From positions 1-9,473 of the forward strand of contig NW_003314604.1 in NCBI RefSeq assembly GCF_000143415.4: DNA of 9,473 nucleotides. The letters run 5' to 3'. Position numbers and translations under genes: made by a program. Below are positions 1-9,473 of this stretch, piece after piece; position 1 is the first letter of the stretch, and each line of letters opens with the position of its first letter. This stretch comes from Selaginella moellendorffii (taxonomy: Eukaryota; Plantae; Lycopodiophyta). The notes under the pieces were generated by a model. The model searched no databases. It was not told the origin of the DNA and saw only the letters and a list, made by a program, of their open reading frames with translations.

Positions 1-110
1 ATCTTTGTGCTCGCAGCACCCATGAATCCTTTCTGTTTCCTACGAAGACTTTAGTAAGAGGAATTAACTTGGGGTGTTTACCCTTTATGTTAGAGGAATC
101 GTGGCCGAAT

Positions 111-308
111 AATAAAACTGTTCTCCCGACAAGCAAAGCTCGTGATCTTGACCGAAACCGGTGGCCTTTGGAGCGAGTGATTTCGACCGAGCCTTGGATA
201 ACATCACCGTCTTCAATCACTAGTGGAAAACCTATCGATCACAAAGAGAGAGAAAAGCTGTTGTCCCCACCTGGAGAGGTTGTCTTTGGCAAATCCAAAG
301 AGTGAACG
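111..308 (-). pseudogene. PRMT10 exon 5/6/7 remnant
   Basis: Degenerate direct copy of about 1961-2208 (ATAAAACTGTTCTCCCGAC, CGAGCCTTGGA, TGGAGAGGTTGTC) plus an exon 5 scrap at 288-308. Confidence 0.8.
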
Positions 309-505
309 AGCATAGGACATGCTATCAAATAAGAAGTCCGGCTGCCTGCGATCAGCTTGAGTTTTCCTACAGGCACTTATATGTCGTGAGCAGAATCGTT
401 CACGACTGCCTGGTGCATCTTTGGTTTCCAAAGATTCTATATTCTATGCATGGGCATATGCTCTAAGCATCTCAGGCATTGATACCAGCGAAGTCCACGG
501 TGACT
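309..505 (-). pseudogene. Heavily deleted inverted PPR remnant
   Basis: The reverse complement matches blocks of 4340-4580 (e.g. GAGATGCTTAGAGCATAT, AGAATATAGAAT, ACGATTCTGCTCAC) and the E-like part (GGACTT..TTTGATAGCAT). Confidence 0.65.
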
Positions 506-681
506 GCCACTGTGCCTTGGCACGTGTCTCAAGCACATTGAGCGTCTCCTAGCCCACGTTATTCACGCAAGGCCTGTCTAATAGCATAAATACATGTCTT
601 CCTCCACACTATAATACATACCACTCTCCTGTTGTTGTTATCTTTGCAGTAGCACGGTTTAATCCTTGCGAAGCAAATCCC

Positions 682-978
682 ATGGACAAGGCAGCAAAGA
701 TCACTCTTGTTCTCACACTCACTGTTGCATTTGCATTTGCCTCACTCGAGTCCACCAATGCTGTTGAGATAGCTCCCAACACAAAGTTTGTGCCGGCTTC
801 TTCTCTTCTCTCATACTTCAGGAGCCTGAAAGAGCTGGAGTGCATGCCGCACTCTCAATGCTGCCCCGACTCCAAGCCCTGCCCATCAGAGGACCAGGAG
901 TGTAAGATCTGTGCCCACACTTATCCTGCACTGTGCTTCTGCACGGACAAACCTGAGCTTAACAAGCTGATGCTGTAA
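682..978 (+). CDS. Secreted 8-Cys peptide, Bowman-Birk inhibitor-like, copy 1 (loop CAHTYPALC)
   Basis: 98-aa intronless ORF: signal peptide (about aa 1-27, ending TNA), spacer, then C-x5-CC-x5-C-x6-C-x2-C-x7-C-x-C. The segment ICAHTYPALCFCTD resembles the soybean BBI second loop ICALSYPAQCFCVD. The ORF is intact in all three copies and has a TATA-like element upstream. Confidence 0.85.
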   Translation: MDKAAKITLVLTLTVAFAFASLESTNAVEIAPNTKFVPASSLLSYFRSLKELECMPHSQCCPDSKPCPSEDQECKICAHTYPALCFCTDKPELNKLML

Positions 979-1258
979 TCTGGAGGTATGCATAACTTAT
1001 CTCATGTTTCTTTATACTCTGTGCTAAGCATTTGTGTGTCCCAGAAGATGGTCTACCTTTGTACACCTTCTGATCTGAAGAGTAGAGTAATAATTTCTTT
1101 ATGTGCCCATTAATGGCTGTGAAGTGCCTATCTCTTTGATAGCCATGAGGTGATCCAAGTCTGTTCAATTCACTAAGACACAAAATTTGTGAAATTGAAG
1201 ATAATACATCAAGCATCAATCTTTGTTGTTTTTCTCTGTGTGACCATGGCAGCCAACA

Positions 1259-1329
1259 TGACTGCTGGTCTACTGGTAGAATAGTACCCTGCCACGGTAT
1301 AAACCCGTGTTCAATTCCCCGACACTTTG
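1259..1329 (+). pseudogene. tRNA-Gly(GCC) pseudogene or tRNA-derived remnant
   Basis: 1266-1321 (TGGTCTACTGGTAGAATAGTACCCTGCCACGGTATAAACCCGTGTTCAATTCCCCG) matches the plant cytosolic tRNA-Gly(GCC) core as recalled, with about 6 mismatches. Anticodon GCC at 1291-1293 sits in a GTACC/GGTAT stem. The acceptor stem does not pair and the T-stem has two mismatches. Confidence 0.85.
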
Positions 1330-1415
1330 GGATGTTTCTCCTTTTTTTGAGTCTCAGAGAGTTCAACTGGGGATTTCTGCTTCAATACAGGCGTTTATAT
1401 TTTAGATATCTACCA

Positions 1416-1866
1416 ATGTAAAGATAAGGCATTTAATCGAGCTCGCTCGCTCTGTTTGGTTTTTGTTGCTACTTCCCTCTTGACAACAAGCTTTTCATCT
1501 GGCAGCATCCGCCCTGACTTGATTGTATTGTCATTAGCATCAATCAAACAAAAAGTACCAGTCTTCACCGATATGGAACGCAGTGCGAGCTGGCTGTGGC
1601 TCCAATCCAGATGCAAACCAGTGGGAATTTCATCATTTTCACGGGCCACCATGACAGCAACTCGAAAGTACGTTCGAGAGGGAAGCTTGATCCTCAAACT
1701 TAGCAACTTTTGGGGGCCATAGATCATCTATGGATCATTAAACCTTTCACGATTGTTTGTCTAAAAGTGCCACTTTTGGATAGCAGCATCCATCCTTTAT
1801 TTTACCCGAAAACTTTAGTACCAGGATGAAAAACGAATTAGTTAATATTCACTTTTAAAAGTCATG
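1416..1866. repeat. Inverted repeat partner of about 5624-6129
   Basis: Reverse-complement anchors GAGCGAGCGAGCT, ATGCTGCCAGATGAAAAGCTTGTTGTCAAG, GTGGCCCGTGAAA and CTTTTAAAAGTGAATATTAACTA. Confidence 0.88.
1445..1793 (-). pseudogene. Degenerate paralog of the MGAASTK gene
   Basis: Begins ATGGATGCTGCTATCCAAAAG at 1793 with an early stop. It then reads MIYGPQKLLSLRIKLPSRTYFRVAVMVARENDEIPTGLHLD...GTFCLIDANDNTIKSGRMLPDEKLVVK. Confidence 0.5.
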
Positions 1867-1928
1867 TACCCTTTCGTGAGTGTCAATGTCTATAGTTTTG
1901 CTTGAAAGAATCAGGAAAATCTTAGTTT

Positions 1929-3510
<1,582 letters not shown>

Positions 3511-3533
3511 CCTCACCGCCACCGCTGCCTGTA

Positions 3534-3613
3534 AAACCCTAGACGACATAGATCCAAAACCCTAGACCCAGACCGTACAGACACGTCACCATACCGTACT
3601 AACACGTCACCAT
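3534..3613 (-). promoter_or_regulatory. Putative PRMT10 promoter/5' elements: two telo-boxes and a duplicated ACACGTCACCAT
   Basis: AAACCCTA at 3534-3541 and 3557-3564; 12-nt direct repeat at 3581-3592 and 3602-3613. Confidence 0.45.
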
Positions 3614-3874
3614 TAAGACATTATCGTTCAAACAGGTCAACTCTCAAACAAGCTTGAGAGTTTTATTATTATTATTATCAGTAGCGAAGTGCGTGGCTAT
3701 CAAAGAAACAGCCACTAATGCACCAATTGCAAAGCGGAAAATACAGAAGACGGGCGACTTATGAAGAATGGAGGAACAAATGTCTTTATGTGTTAAAACT
3801 AAGTGGTTGTGGGACACATAAATGCTTAGCACTGAGTATAAAGAAACATGAGATAAGTTATGCATACCTCCAGA

Positions 3875-4171
3875 TTACAGCATCAGCTTGTTAAGCCCAG
3901 ATTTGTCCGTGCAGAAGCACAGTGCAGGATAAATTTTGGCACAGATCTTACACTCCTGGTCCTCTGATGGGCAGGGCTTGGAGTCGGGGCAGCATTGAGA
4001 GTGCGGCATGCACTCCAGCTCTTTCAGGCTCCTGAAGTATGAGAGAAGAGAAGAAGCCGGCACAAACTTTGTGTTGGGAGCTATCTCAACAGCATTGGTG
4101 GACTCGAGTGAGGCAAATGCAAATGCAACAGTGAGTGTGAGAACAAGGGTGATCTTTGCTGCCTTGTCCAT
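3875..4171 (-). CDS. Secreted BBI-like peptide, copy 2 (loop CAKIYPALC, putative P1 Lys)
   Basis: 297-nt ORF with 6 nt differences from copy 1. The start is placed at 4171 by homology to copies 1 and 3 and by the TATATA at 4237-4242. Confidence 0.85.
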   Translation of the reverse strand: MDKAAKITLVLTLTVAFAFASLESTNAVEIAPNTKFVPASSLLSYFRSLKELECMPHSQCCPDSKPCPSEDQECKICAKIYPALCFCTDKSGLNKLML

Positions 4172-4236
4172 GGGATTTACTTCGCAAGGATTAAACCGTG
4201 CTGCTGCAAGGATAACAACAACAGGAGAGTGGTATG

Positions 4237-4370
4237 TATATAGAGTGGAGGAAGACATGTATTTATACTATTAGACAGGCCTTGCATGAATAACGTGGGC
4301 TAGTTGACGTGCAACTTGAGACACGTGCCAAGGCACAGTGGCGGATAAGATACAGTCATATGCCCACGTG
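4237..4370 (-). promoter_or_regulatory. Putative BBI-like gene promoter: TATA plus ACGT-core boxes
   Basis: TATATA 4237-4242, AACGTG 4292-4297, TGACGT 4305-4310, CACGTG 4322-4327 and 4365-4370. The TATA-like element, AACGTG and the proximal G-box recur in copy 1 (G-box 521-526) and copy 3. Confidence 0.5.
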
Positions 4371-5036
4371 GACTTAGCTGCTTCAGGGGTATTCCCAGGA
4401 TGGGCATCTGGCATCGGCAAAAGGGATCGTTGATGCAATGAATGAGGGGACATTGTCTCTTGGAATGAGATGCTTAGTGCATATTCCCATCCCCAGAATA
4501 TAGAATTTTTTGACAGCACACTTAGAGAGATGCCACAGGTGGACTTGGTCTCGTACGTGGACGATTCTGCTCACAGCATATGCCCAGGCTGGGAATCTCC
4601 ATGACCAGATGACCTGGTATCTTGTATCACGAGCAAGGCACTAACGTTCCACGTGGGGTATTGTGTTAAACATGACACACCCTCGCCTGGTTGACGACAA
4701 GGAAGCTGTTGGAATCAATGCCGTATCGCTACGGAGTGACGTGGAATGCCATGCTTGCCATCCTTAACTACAAATCATAATGAATTTGATGCCCACCAGA
4801 GACACAGCATATGCCCATTCGCGGCATCCAAGGCTCTCCTTTACATTCTCAATTTGGAGGGTGTTAGTCAGGACTAAGTAACATTTATGTGAGCATTCTT
4901 ACAGCATTGAGCCACTCCGGCCTGGTTCAATGGAGTTTGATTATTTTGTGTTTTCAGACAGGTAGACCTGGACTTGTGAATGAACCTTTTTATAGCATGC
5001 TAGGATCAGGGTAAGGTGGCGGTGGCGGCATTCCTG
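4340..5036 (+). pseudogene. Degenerate PLS/E-class pentatricopeptide repeat (PPR) gene remnant
   Basis: Broken frames read DIVSWNEMLSAYS, EMPQVDLVS/WTILLTAYAQAGNL, KLLESMPYRYGVTWNAMLA and LEGVSQD*VTF/SILTALSHSGLV, typical plant S/L2/S2 PPR motifs with stops and frameshifts. Boundaries are approximate. Confidence 0.85.
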
Positions 5037-5289
5037 ATATCCGAGTCAAGTGATTAGCGACCCGGTTGTAAGGGATCGATTGCCCAATGAAACGGTCCAG
5101 GACATTGCTGCTGTGAACTCGCGATTTTCGTTTACTCTTTTTGGAAGCGACAGGCTCTGCTGGCTGGTGTTCACGCTTTCATGATAAAATCCCGCTCTAT
5201 CCCTCTCTCTCTTTCTTTTTGCTAACTCTACTAGTGTGGCTTTCCAGGGGAATTCGTCGAATTCAGCAGAGAAGGAAATCGAGTTGACA
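5037..5289 (+). pseudogene. Inverted PRMT10 fragment (exon 5, intron 5, start of exon 6)
   Basis: Reads PSQVISDPVV, IDCPNETVQDIAAVNSRFSFTLFGSDRLC, the intron end ACTAGTGTGGCTTTCCAG, then GNSSNSAEKEIELT. It is a diverged reverse complement of about 2206-2492. Confidence 0.88.
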
Positions 5290-5294
5290 CTAAG

Positions 5295-5613
5295 GCATGA
5301 TTGCAGATTAAACTATTGTGGAGCACTCATATGCGATGCTAAGAAGCTCTTTGACGCTGCGCCGGTCGAAAGCATTGTGTTGTGGACTTCCGCTGCTTCA
5401 GGGATATTCCCAGGATGCACACAGAGCCCCAAGACTCTCCTTTACATTCAGGGTGTTAGTCGAACATTTATGAGCATTCTTAGAGAACGTTGAGCCTTTG
5501 AAAGAGGTCTGTCAATGCTTTGGATCGATGGAGTTCGATTATGTTGTGGTTTCTAAGGAAGATCACAGTGTATGATTGATGATCTTGGTAAAGCTGGACT
5601 TCTGAACGAGGCT
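5295..5613 (+). pseudogene. Second PPR remnant (C-terminal L2/S2/E-like part)
   Basis: Reads DAKKLFDAAPVESIVLWT, GVSRTFMSIL, FGSMEFDYVVVSKEDH and MIDDLGKAGLLNEA. Paralogous to 4820-5000. Confidence 0.8.
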
Positions 5614-5731
5614 AGCAGCTCTTCATGGCTTTTAAAAGTGAATATTAACTATTTCGTTTTCATACTATTCCTCCTCAGCTCCAGGTATTAAAAGTCTTCG
5701 TGGGTAAACAGAAGGAAGGAATAGAGGATAC

Positions 5732-6096
5732 ATGGGTGCTGCGAGCACAAAGGTCCAGATCACCAATGGCACTGACTATATTGTTGTTCGTCGTGACAGG
5801 TTCAGGATGATCTATGGTGTGAAGCTGGGAGAAGTTTGAGGATCAAGCTTACCTCTCGAACTTACTTTCGAGTTGCTGTCATGGTGGCCCGTGAAATTGA
5901 TGAAATTCCCACTGGTTTGCATCTGGATGTCAGGGACTTGGAGCCCCAGGCAGCGTTCTATATCAGTGAAGAAAATGGCACTTTCTATTTGACAGATGCC
6001 AACGACAATACATTCAAGTCAAGTCGGATGCTGCCAGATGAAAAGCTTGTTGTCAAGTGCTACTTAGTCCAAAAGGGAAGTAGTAACAAAAACTAA
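5732..6096 (+). pseudogene. Frameshifted gene for an unknown ~120-aa protein starting MGAASTK
   Basis: The ATG at 5732 reads MGAASTKVQITNGTDYIVVRRDRFRMIYGVKLGEV*. A 1-nt shift near 5820-5835 joins it to LRIKLTSRTYFRVAVM...KLVVKCYLVQKGSSNKN*. The paralog starting at 1727 keeps MIYG...LRIKL in one frame. Confidence 0.55.
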
Positions 6097-6180
6097 ACAG
6101 AGCGAGCGAGCTTTCCAACGTCTTTACATAAGAGCTGCAAATCCATGTATCTTTGCTTGATATGAGTTGAGTTGAGTGGA

Positions 6181-7210
<1,030 letters not shown>

Positions 7211-7532
7211 AGCCCTAGACCCAGACCGTGCAGACACGTCACAGTTAAGACTGACACATCGTTGTAGTTGTCAACTCTCAAACAAGCTTGAGAGTTTTTT
7301 TATTATTACCAGTAGTGAATGACACAGTACATGTCGTGGCTATCAAAGAAATAACCACTACTAGATCATTTGCAAAGCGGAAAATGCCCAAAATCACATA
7401 GTTTTAGCACATAAAAACATTTATTACTCCATTCTTCAGGTCAGAAGGTGTGCAGCAAGTCGCCCATCTTCTAGGACACACAAATGATTAGCACTGAGTA
7501 TAAAGAAACACGAATTAAGTCATACCTCCAGA

Positions 7533-7829
7533 TTACAGCATCAGCTTGTTAAGCTCAGGTTTGTCCGTGCAGAAGCACAGTGCAGGATAAGTGTGGGCAC
7601 AGATCTTACACTCCTGGTCCTCTGATGGGCAGGGCTTGGAGTCGGGGCAGCATTGAGAGTGCGGCATGCACTCCAGCTCTTTCAGGCTCCTGAAGTATGA
7701 GAGAAGAGAAGAAGCTGGCACAAACTTTGTGTTGGGAGCTATCTCAACAGCATTGGTGGACTCGAGTGAGGCAAATGAAATTGCAACTATGAGTGTGAGA
7801 ACAAAAGTGATCTTTGCTGCCTTCTCCAT
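7533..7829 (-). CDS. Secreted BBI-like peptide, copy 3 (loop CAHTYPALC)
   Basis: 297-nt ORF. The protein is identical to copy 1 except for 5 substitutions in the signal peptide (D2E, L9F, T14I, F17I, A18S). Confidence 0.85.
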   Translation of the reverse strand: MEKAAKITFVLTLIVAISFASLESTNAVEIAPNTKFVPASSLLSYFRSLKELECMPHSQCCPDSKPCPSEDQECKICAHTYPALCFCTDKPELNKLML

Positions 7830-7999
7830 GGGATTTGCTACGCAGGGACTAAACTGTGCTGCTGCAAAGATAGCTACAGAGAGTGGTATGTATATAGAGT
7901 GGAGGAAGACATGTATTTATGCTATTAGACAGGCCTTGCATGAATAACGTGGGCTAGGAGACGTGCAATGTACTTGAGACACGTGCCAAGGCACAGTGG

Positions 8000-8700
8000 C
8001 GGAAAGATACAGTCATATGCCCACGTGGACTTAGCTGCTTCAGGGGTATTCCCAGGATGGGCATCTGGCATTGGCAAAAGGGATCGTTGATGCAATGAAT
8101 GAGAGTGTCTCTTGGAATGAGATGCTTAGAGCATATTCCCATCCCCAGAATATAGAATTTTGGCAGCACACTTAGAGAGATGCCACAGGAGGACTTGGTC
8201 TCGTTCGTGGACGATTCTGCTCACAGCATATGCCCAGGATGGGAATCTCCATGACCAGATGACCTGGTATCTTGTACCACGAGCAAGGCACTAACGTTCC
8301 ATGTGGGGTATTGTGTCAAACATGACACACCCTCGCCTGGTTGACGACAAGGAAGCTGTTGGAATCGATGCCGTATCGCTACGGAGTGACGTGGAATGTC
8401 ATGCTTGCCATCCTTAACTACAAATCATAATGAATTTGATGCCCACCAGAGACACAGCATATGCCCATTCGCGGCATCCAAGGCTCTCCTTTACATTCTC
8501 AATTTGGAGGGTGTTAGTCAGGACTAAGTAACATTTATGTGAGCATTCTTACAGCATTGAGCCACTCCGGCCTGGTTCAATGGAGTTTGATTATTTTGTG
8601 TTTTCAGACATGATTTACGTTCTTGGTAGACCTGGACTTGTGAATGAACCTTTTTATAGCATGCTAGGATCAGGGTAAGGTGGCGGTGGCGGCATTCCTG
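8000..8700 (+). pseudogene. PPR remnant, duplicate of 4340-5036
   Basis: Nearly identical to 4340-5036 and shares most disabling lesions. Confidence 0.85.
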
Positions 8701-8943
8701 ATATCCGAGTCAAGTGATTAGCGACCTGGTTGTAAGAGATCGATTGCCCAATGAAACGGTCCAGGACATTGCTGCTGTGAATTCGCGATTTTCGTTTACT
8801 CTTTTTGGAAGCGACAGGCTCTGCTGGCTGGTGTTCACGCTTTCATGATAAAATCCTGCTCTATCCCTCTCTCTTTCTTTTCGCTAACTCTACTAGTGTG
8901 GCTTTCCTCGAATCCAGCAGAGAAGGAAATCGAGTTGACACCA
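8701..8943 (+). pseudogene. Inverted PRMT10 exon 5-6 fragment, duplicate of 5037-5289
   Basis: Same sequence as 5037-5289, with the exon 6 acceptor deleted. Confidence 0.88.
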
Positions 8944-9299
8944 ATTGTGGAGCACGCATATGCCCGAAATGGACATGAAGCGATGCTAAGAAGCTCCTTG
9001 ACGCTGCGCCGGTCGAAAGCATTGTGTTGTGGACTTCGCTGCTTCAGGGATATTCCCAGGATGCACACAGAGCCCCAAGACTCTCCTTTACATTCTCAAT
9101 TGGAGGGTGTTAGTCGAACATTTATGAGCATTCTTACAGAGCGTTGAGCCACTCAGGTCATTTGAAAGAGGCCTGTCAATACTTTGGATCGATGGAGTTG
9201 GTTTCCAAGGAAGATCACAGTGGTAAAGCTGGACTTGTGAACGAGGCCAAGGACCTGTTTGATAGCATCGCCGTACGATCCGGGTACGGCGGCATTCCT
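8944..9299 (+). pseudogene. PPR remnant, duplicate of 5295-5613
   Basis: Reads AYARNGH, QLEGVSRTFMSILT, LSHSGHLKEACQYFGSME and GKAGLVNEAKDLFDS. Confidence 0.8.
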
Positions 9300-9473
9300 G
9301 ATGGTCGAACTTATATCCGAGCCTGTTGTTGTGAAAGAGATCGATTGCTCCAATGCTGTTAAGTCGCGATTCTCGTTCACTCTTTAGGCTCTGTGGATTT
9401 GCCGGCTACTTTTGTTCTTGCGGATCAGAAATCTCTCCAGCTCTCTTTCCCTCTTCCCTACTCTATTAGTGTG
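9296..9473 (+). pseudogene. Inverted PRMT10 exon 5 and intron 5 fragment, running off the window
   Basis: ATGGTCGAACTTATATCCG, GAGATCGATTGCTCCAATGC, AAGTCGCGATT and AGGCTCTGTGGATTTGCCGGCT all match PRMT10 exon 5, with deletions between them. Confidence 0.85.

What the first reader, a model, noticed from the sequence alone, without database searches (positions are those of the whole stretch)
3917..3943. BBI-like paralogs differ at the predicted P1-P1' reactive site (His-Thr vs Lys-Ile)
Seen: copies 1 and 2 differ at only 6 of 297 nt. Three of these fall in two adjacent codons (CAC ACT at 916-921 vs AAA ATT at 3937-3932), two alter the C-terminal tail, and one is synonymous. Established: in the 9-residue Bowman-Birk loop C-P2-P1-P1'-x-P-x-x-C, P1 sets specificity and Lys/Arg gives trypsin inhibition. 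Inference: this young array is diversifying protease specificity, with one trypsin-type copy and two copies carrying an uncommon P1 His of unknown target.
Basis: partly seen in the sequence, partly recalled or inferred. Interest (0 to 1): 0.85.

Follow-up and report, generated by a model that had tools for sequence, protein, structure and literature searches.

The report
Spikemoss protease-inhibitor copies vary at tip
A spikemoss carries several nearly identical, unannotated, strongly transcribed genes for a small one-headed relative of its known protease inhibitors, and the copies differ at the residue that picks the target enzyme (His, Lys or Tyr), a pattern already known from legume inhibitors.

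Summary
The window is Selaginella moellendorffii scaffold GL377908.1, with three intronless 98-aa genes. Copies 1 and 2 differ at 6 of 297 nt, three of them in codons 79-80 (His-Thr vs Lys-Ile). Their only credible relatives are the two-domain SmBBI1-5. These genes are an unannotated one-domain version, and codons 79-80 align with P1-P1' and sit at the tip of a predicted hairpin. The syntenic scaffold carries a fourth copy with Tyr-Thr, so P1 takes three residues in four copies. Public contigs confirm His, Tyr and Lys forms; Lys-Ile is about 1% of depth. Changes are enriched at P1-P1' (p about 0.002), but p is 0.10 if Lys-Ile arose in one event, and gene-wide pN/pS is about 1. No copy has the canonical P1' Ser, Pfam does not call them BBI, and the fold search was inconclusive. 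P1 diversification, including His, is published for Vigna BBIs. Verdict: real, probably a diversifying inhibitor locus; selection and activity unproven. The scan noted the same pair before, apparently on the main scaffold (s1-341483).

The parts
682..978 (+). Copy 1: intronless 98-aa precursor (hydrophobic N-terminus about 1-27, pro-region, one 8-Cys domain 54-87, short tail); P1-P1' His-Thr
   Evidence: identical on GL377593.1; copy-1-type contigs in X1 and X8
910..936 (+). Copy 1 nine-residue loop CAHTYPALC; P1-P1' at 916-921
3875..4171 (-). Copy 2: 98-aa precursor, P1-P1' Lys-Ile; inverted relative to copy 1
   Evidence: exact contig in X1
3917..3943 (-). Copy 2 loop CAKIYPALC; P1 Lys 3937-3935, P1' Ile 3934-3932, P3' Pro
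3742..3808 (.). 67-nt in-place inversion in the 3' untranslated region of copy 2 only
   Evidence: I11; opposite-strand joint 3742/3808
4260..4266 (-). TATA-like box of copy 2; contig depth in the putative RNA runs falls off at about 4220 (equivalents at 586-592 and 7914-7920)
7533..7829 (-). Copy 3: 98-aa precursor, His-Thr, Cys domain identical to copy 1, 7 private changes in the first 114 nt; mis-annotated as the start of the fused model SELMODRAFT_432465
   Evidence: copy-3 letters in X1 and X8 contigs
7575..7601 (-). Copy 3 loop CAHTYPALC
1929..3510 (-). Intact PRMT10 gene between the inverted copies 1 and 2 (neighbour; same protein as SELMODRAFT_267887)
6174..7200 (-). Frameshifted, 3'-truncated PRMT10 duplicate carried along with copy 3
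4508..8157 (.). Extra tandem unit of about 3.65 kb (holds copy 3), absent from the main scaffold GL377593.1, which matches 1-4500 and about 8400-9300 at 100%

Best explanation
These are secreted or vacuolar, one-headed canonical serine-protease inhibitors of the Selaginella BBI-like family. After signal and pro-peptide removal, an 8-Cys miniprotein presents a disulfide-closed beta-hairpin loop whose residue 79 (P1) enters the protease S1 pocket. The locus is young and copy-number variable: one haplotype has three copies (His-Thr, Lys-Ile, His-Thr) and the syntenic one has one (Tyr-Thr). Tyr-Thr should be chymotrypsin-type. His-Thr, one base away from Tyr, is probably a shifted or weaker aromatic-pocket binder. 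Lys-Ile is derived from His-Thr on the copy-2 branch and should be trypsin-type but weak, because Ile replaces the hydroxyl residue at P1'. The excess of change at P1-P1' most likely reflects diversifying selection against pest or pathogen proteases. Shown: sequences, homology, copy structure, presence in putative RNA runs, statistical excess. Inferred: disulfide pairing, processing, inhibition, specificities, selection.
For: Homology to SmBBI: 60% identity over 35 aa, pairwise E 3e-11; only credible non-self hit among 1.84 billion proteins; all 8 Cys and the P3' Pro invariant. The hairpin alone retrieves soybean BBI loop 2 as top PDB hit, though weakly (E 0.35; E 0.088 for the Tyr copy). Two AlphaFold models put residues 79-82 in the turn of a two-strand hairpin. 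Four intact ORFs; codon 79 is the only codon with three amino acids; 4 of 28 substitutions fall in 6 nt, p=0.0024. Depth about 1e5 inside the gene against about 4 upstream in X1. P1 is under positive selection and takes His in Vigna BBIs (PMC12894363).
Against: No Pfam BBI hit for the four copies. No BBI structure retrieved by fold searches. P1' Ser and P2 Thr both absent; Ser-to-Ala at P1' costs SFTI-1 11-fold (PMC12670400). Gene-wide pN/pS about 1, not significant; p=0.10 if Lys-Ile is one event. Lys-Ile form about 1% of depth. No activity data.
Confidence: 0.55

Rival explanations
1. They are BBI-like inhibitors, but the Lys-Ile change is neutral or degenerative: one multi-base mutation or short conversion tract in a redundant, barely expressed copy, under relaxed constraint.
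For: Copy 2 is about 1.4% (X1) and 1.1% (X8) of loop depth and has an inverted 3' UTR segment. Differences cluster elsewhere too (signal peptide, codons 91-92), site patterns conflict along the gene as expected from gene conversion, and the cluster test is not significant when counted as events or without pre-naming the site. pN/pS about 1.
Against: The cluster falls exactly on the pre-specified specificity site and yields Lys, the commonest functional P1. An independent change (Tyr/His) hits the same codon. All ORFs and cysteines are intact.
Confidence: 0.28
2. The one-domain proteins are no longer protease inhibitors. They are knottin-like defence peptides whose exposed hairpin varies for another target, such as a membrane, ion channel or glycan.
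For: Loss of both P2 Thr and P1' Ser. The weak fold hits are cystine-knot peptides (gurmarin, a spider toxin, agouti-related protein TM 0.48), none significant. A paralog SmBBI1 has Pro at P1 of its first loop, so loops in this family can lose function.
Against: The loop keeps the 9-residue spacing, the P3' Pro and strong likeness to the active soybean chymotrypsin loop, which also has Ala at P2. The three P1 residues are Tyr, Lys and His, two of them classical P1 choices.
Confidence: 0.14
3. The Lys-Ile difference or the third copy is an assembly artefact of a small unplaced scaffold.
For: The window is a 9.5-kb scaffold that duplicates part of GL377593.1.
Against: Independent runs hold exact copy-2 loop and 3' end contigs and copy-3-specific letters.
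Confidence: 0.03

Closest known systems
Selaginella moellendorffii BBI1-5 (James et al. 2017, Plant Cell; ARE30271-ARE30275; paper not readable here)
   Same: Same species, intronless signal + pro + 8-Cys domain layout, same Cys spacing apart from one extra residue, 46-51% identity to their first domain; paralogs also vary at P1 (Lys, Arg, Pro).
   Different: One domain instead of two; different locus (beside PRMT10); P2 Ala, P1 Tyr/His/Lys and P1' Thr/Ile instead of Thr-Lys/Arg-Ser; not annotated as a protein in the searched databases.
Legume Bowman-Birk inhibitors (Pfam PF00228), especially the chymotrypsin loop of soybean BBI (PDB 1BBI)
   Same: Nine-residue loop with matching C-A-x-x-Y-P-A-x-C-F-C pattern; P1 variation among paralogs and alleles.
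   Different: 8 Cys and one head against 14 Cys and two heads; C-x2-C rather than C-x-C before the loop; no P1' Ser; no Pfam or fold match.
Vigna BBI1/BBI2 P1 diversification (PMC12894363)
   Same: P1 takes Lys, Arg, His and others; His target unknown.
   Different: There positive selection is shown with 42 taxa; here four copies inside one species give only an enrichment.
SFTI-1 and frog BBI-like peptides
   Same: BBI-type loop carried on a scaffold other than the legume BBI fold.
   Different: Those keep Thr-Lys-Ser; this one is a four-disulfide miniprotein with clear homology to SmBBIs.

Membership tests
Selaginella BBI-like family (SmBBI1-5) | Sequence homology and 8-Cys domain pattern | tested here: met
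Selaginella BBI-like family (SmBBI1-5) | Two tandem domains (double-headed) | tested here: not met
   stop after one domain in all four copies
Bowman-Birk family (PF00228) | Nine-residue Cys-to-Cys loop with Pro at P3' | tested here: met
Bowman-Birk family (PF00228) | Loop exposed at the tip of a beta-hairpin | tested here: met
   two AlphaFold models, mean pLDDT 76 and 70, strands 22-28 and 33-39 of the 48-mer; (prediction only)
Bowman-Birk family (PF00228) | Loop disulfide Cys77-Cys85 and cis-Pro | not testable with these tools
   model coordinates are not returned
Bowman-Birk family (PF00228) | Ser at P1' | tested here: not met
   Thr or Ile in all copies
Bowman-Birk family (PF00228) | Thr at P2 | tested here: not met
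   Ala, as in soybean BBI loop 2
Bowman-Birk family (PF00228) | Pfam profile match | tested here: not met
   0 of 4 copies, 6 of 6 SmBBIs
Bowman-Birk family (PF00228) | 14-Cys, two-headed legume framework and fold | tested here: inconclusive
   8 Cys only; fold searches gave nothing significant for a 48-aa model
Bowman-Birk family (PF00228) | P1-dependent inhibition of serine proteases | not testable with these tools
   needs an assay
Cystine-knot (knottin) peptides | Knotted three-disulfide core | tested here: inconclusive
   only non-significant hits to knottins
Positively selected reactive site | omega>1 at P1 | tested here: inconclusive
   enrichment p=0.0024, or 0.10 as events; pN/pS 0.8-1.6 not significant; no site model run (four sequences)

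The most novel reading that the evidence does not exclude
An overlooked, very highly transcribed one-headed lycophyte inhibitor on a knottin-like four-disulfide scaffold works without the canonical P1' Ser, and within one species its P1-P1' is being rapidly re-tuned (Tyr, His, Lys and further variants in another accession), with the abundant His form aimed at a protease class or pH regime not yet known for Bowman-Birk loops.
Probability: 0.2. Interest if true: 0.68.

Novelty: new variant of a known kind. Interest (0 to 1): 0.4.

Why it matters
It adds a one-headed, non-Ser-P1' branch to the only BBI-like family known from a seedless plant, missed by the annotation although it appears to be strongly transcribed. 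Four natural variants that are nearly identical apart from P1-P1' give a ready-made test of what a His-P1 loop inhibits, which the Vigna paper calls largely unknown, and a 35-residue scaffold of possible use for inhibitor design. The evolutionary pattern itself, reactive-site variation in protease inhibitors, is long known.

Tried and rejected
Pfam, phmmer on PDB with the whole domain, the word-index protein search, exact look-up and the Atlas feature search found nothing for the 98-aa protein. Hit P0002 is a repetitive Cys-rich metagenome protein matching only the C-x5-CC-P stretch, not the loop; rejected. Five fold searches were uninformative. James et al. 2017 is not held, so I cannot exclude that it mentions these genes; none of the deposited proteins found is one-domain. 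From memory a Torresea cearensis BBI has a His-P1 chymotrypsin loop; I could not verify it. The annotated BBI-PRMT fusions (P0001, P0011) are rejected as gene-model errors: every copy has a stop at codon 99 and its own 3' end. A surviving single-headed ancestor is disfavoured: the domain is closer to SmBBI domain 1 (46-51%) than to domain 2 (28-35%), which fits loss of domain 2. DNA run X11 did not confirm Lys-Ile; it seems to be another plant.

Full report
Observation. The window holds three intronless 297-nt ORFs at 682-978 (+), 4171-3875 (-) and 7829-7533 (-). Copies 1 and 2 differ at exactly six bases: one synonymous, three in codons 79-80 (His-Thr vs Lys-Ile) and two in codons 91-92. Copy 3 has His-Thr and seven changes, all in its first 114 nt.

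Source and layout. The window is the whole of Selaginella moellendorffii scaffold GL377908.1. Positions 1-4500 and about 8400-9300 match main scaffold GL377593.1 at 100% (one gap in the first tile), so the window is the same haplotype with one extra tandem unit of about 3.65 kb that holds copy 3 and a frameshifted PRMT10 duplicate. An intact PRMT10 lies between the inverted copies 1 and 2. Scaffold GL377587.1, syntenic on the left flank and probably the other haplotype, has one copy within 10 kb, 92% identical, with Tyr-Thr at codons 79-80. P1 therefore takes three residues in four distinct copies, and it is the only codon with three amino acids.

Reality and expression. Contigs from four public runs of four studies were laid on 3400-4600. 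X1 has a contig identical to copy 2 over 3904-3967, and X1 and X9 have contigs of the copy-2-specific 3' end, so Lys-Ile is real. Copy-3 letters occur in X1 and X8, and the Tyr form in all four runs. In X1 depth is about 1e5 inside the gene, about 4 upstream of 4260 and 0 at 3400-3600, which fits transcription from just below a TATA-like box; the runs are only guessed to be RNA. At the loop X1 shows His 25,045, Tyr 5,462 and Lys 441; X9 His 192, Tyr 298, Lys not seen at the loop; X8 mostly Tyr, Lys about 1%. Contig depth is a poor measure of expression, but Lys-Ile is lowest in all three. DNA run X11 carries Tyr-lineage letters in every contig at 3908 and 4003, so it looks like another plant; only 259 of 670 depth at 3933 has the Thr letter, which hints at further loop variants that the truncated table cannot resolve.

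Identity. A search of 1.84 billion proteins returned a mis-fused model of copy 3, a spurious Cys-rich protein, and SmBBI5. A profile search added nothing beyond the SmBBI cluster. SmBBIs have two 8-Cys domains; these genes have one, with all Cys and the P3' Pro invariant, 46-51% identical to domain 1 and 28-35% to domain 2. Codons 79-80 align with the Lys/Arg-Ser of the SmBBI loops and with Leu-Ser of soybean BBI loop 2, the top but weak PDB hit of the hairpin alone. A family profile retrieves 14 BBI or SFTI sequences among 15 PDB hits, all weak. Two AlphaFold models place residues 79-82 in the turn between two strands. Against strict membership: no Pfam BBI match, no P1' Ser, no P2 Thr, one head, and no significant fold match; the weak fold hits lean to cystine-knot peptides. 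SmBBIs are reported as double-headed inhibitors (PMC7995804; bioRxiv 10.1101/2025.08.26.658694); that BBI3 inhibits trypsin is from my memory of James et al. 2017, which I could not read.

Selection. Across the four copies 4 of 28 substitutions fall in the six bases of P1-P1' (expected 0.57, p=0.0024; mature region only p=0.0013). If the three Lys-Ile changes were one event, p=0.10; without pre-naming the site, p=0.19. Pairwise pN/pS is 0.78-1.57 and never significant; within the Cys domain every difference is non-synonymous (0-7 against 0 synonymous), also not significant. Most informative sites group copies 1 and 2, yet copies 1 and 3 are identical across the Cys domain, which suggests gene conversion and makes Lys-Ile derived on the copy-2 branch. 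The Tyr/His polarity is unresolved. The excess is real under the pre-specified hypothesis but rests on few events.

Mechanism. By established BBI chemistry P1 Lys/Arg gives trypsin and Phe/Tyr/Leu/Trp chymotrypsin inhibition (PMC7760496). Tyr-Thr should thus be chymotrypsin-type and Lys-Ile trypsin-type. P1' Ser matters: Ser-to-Ala raises the Kd of SFTI-1 11-fold (PMC12670400). Thr keeps the hydroxyl and Ile does not, so I infer that Lys-Ile is the weakest binder. His-P1 is reported in Vigna racemosa BBI2 with unknown target, and P1 is under positive selection in Vigna BBIs (PMC12894363). Secretion is inferred from N-terminal hydropathy only.

Verdict. A real, previously unannotated one-headed variant of the Selaginella BBI-like family with three P1 residues among four copies. 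It probably works like a Bowman-Birk loop inhibitor; it is not filed as a canonical BBI because several defining features fail. Diversifying selection is the likeliest reading (0.55) but unproven, and the phenomenon is known. Interest 0.4. The scan noted the same inverted pair before on another piece with the same 3490-base span (s1-341483), which matches GL377593.1 and is not independent DNA.

Noticed in passing
window 6124-7829 (-); L005:10001-11662: Public gene models SELMODRAFT_432465 and SELMODRAFT_414023 wrongly fuse the inhibitor ORF to broken PRMT10 exons; copies 1 and 2 have no called gene at all.
   Followed up: yes
window 1929-3510 and 6174-7200; L005:10679-11605: The three-copy haplotype has an intact PRMT10 here, while the syntenic scaffold has only a truncated one and different genes on its right flank (Tom22 on L004, an RSN1-type channel on L005): a structural difference between the haplotypes.
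   Followed up: partly
window 97-226, 5034-5289, 8698-8940, 9181-9473: Several inverted, decayed fragments of the PRMT10 3' end surround the array, a sign of repeated local inversion and duplication.
   Followed up: partly
run X11, window 3848-4034: At least five contigs cover the loop in this DNA run; one has shifted letters at 3928-3934 and one of equal depth lacks 3848-3888, which includes the stop codon. Possibly more loop variants and a pseudogene in another accession.
   Followed up: no
runs X1, X8, X9: The Tyr to His ratio at the loop differs strongly between runs (about 0.2, over 10, 1.5), which may mean organ- or condition-specific use of the copies.
   Followed up: no
L006:10001-10375, L008:10001-10375: SmBBI1-type paralogs have Met-Pro at P2-P1 of the first loop, probably an inactive head; their differences from BBI3/5 also concentrate in domain 1.
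   Followed up: partly
window 841-942 (Cys domain): Cys spacing C-x5-CC-x5-C-x6-C-x2-C-x7-C-x-C and weak hits to gurmarin, a spider toxin and agouti-related protein hint at a knottin-like core rather than the legume BBI fold.
   Followed up: partly
window 3510-3875: Copy 2 ends only about 365 nt upstream of the PRMT10 start on the same strand, so its 3' end overlaps the likely PRMT10 promoter region.
   Followed up: no
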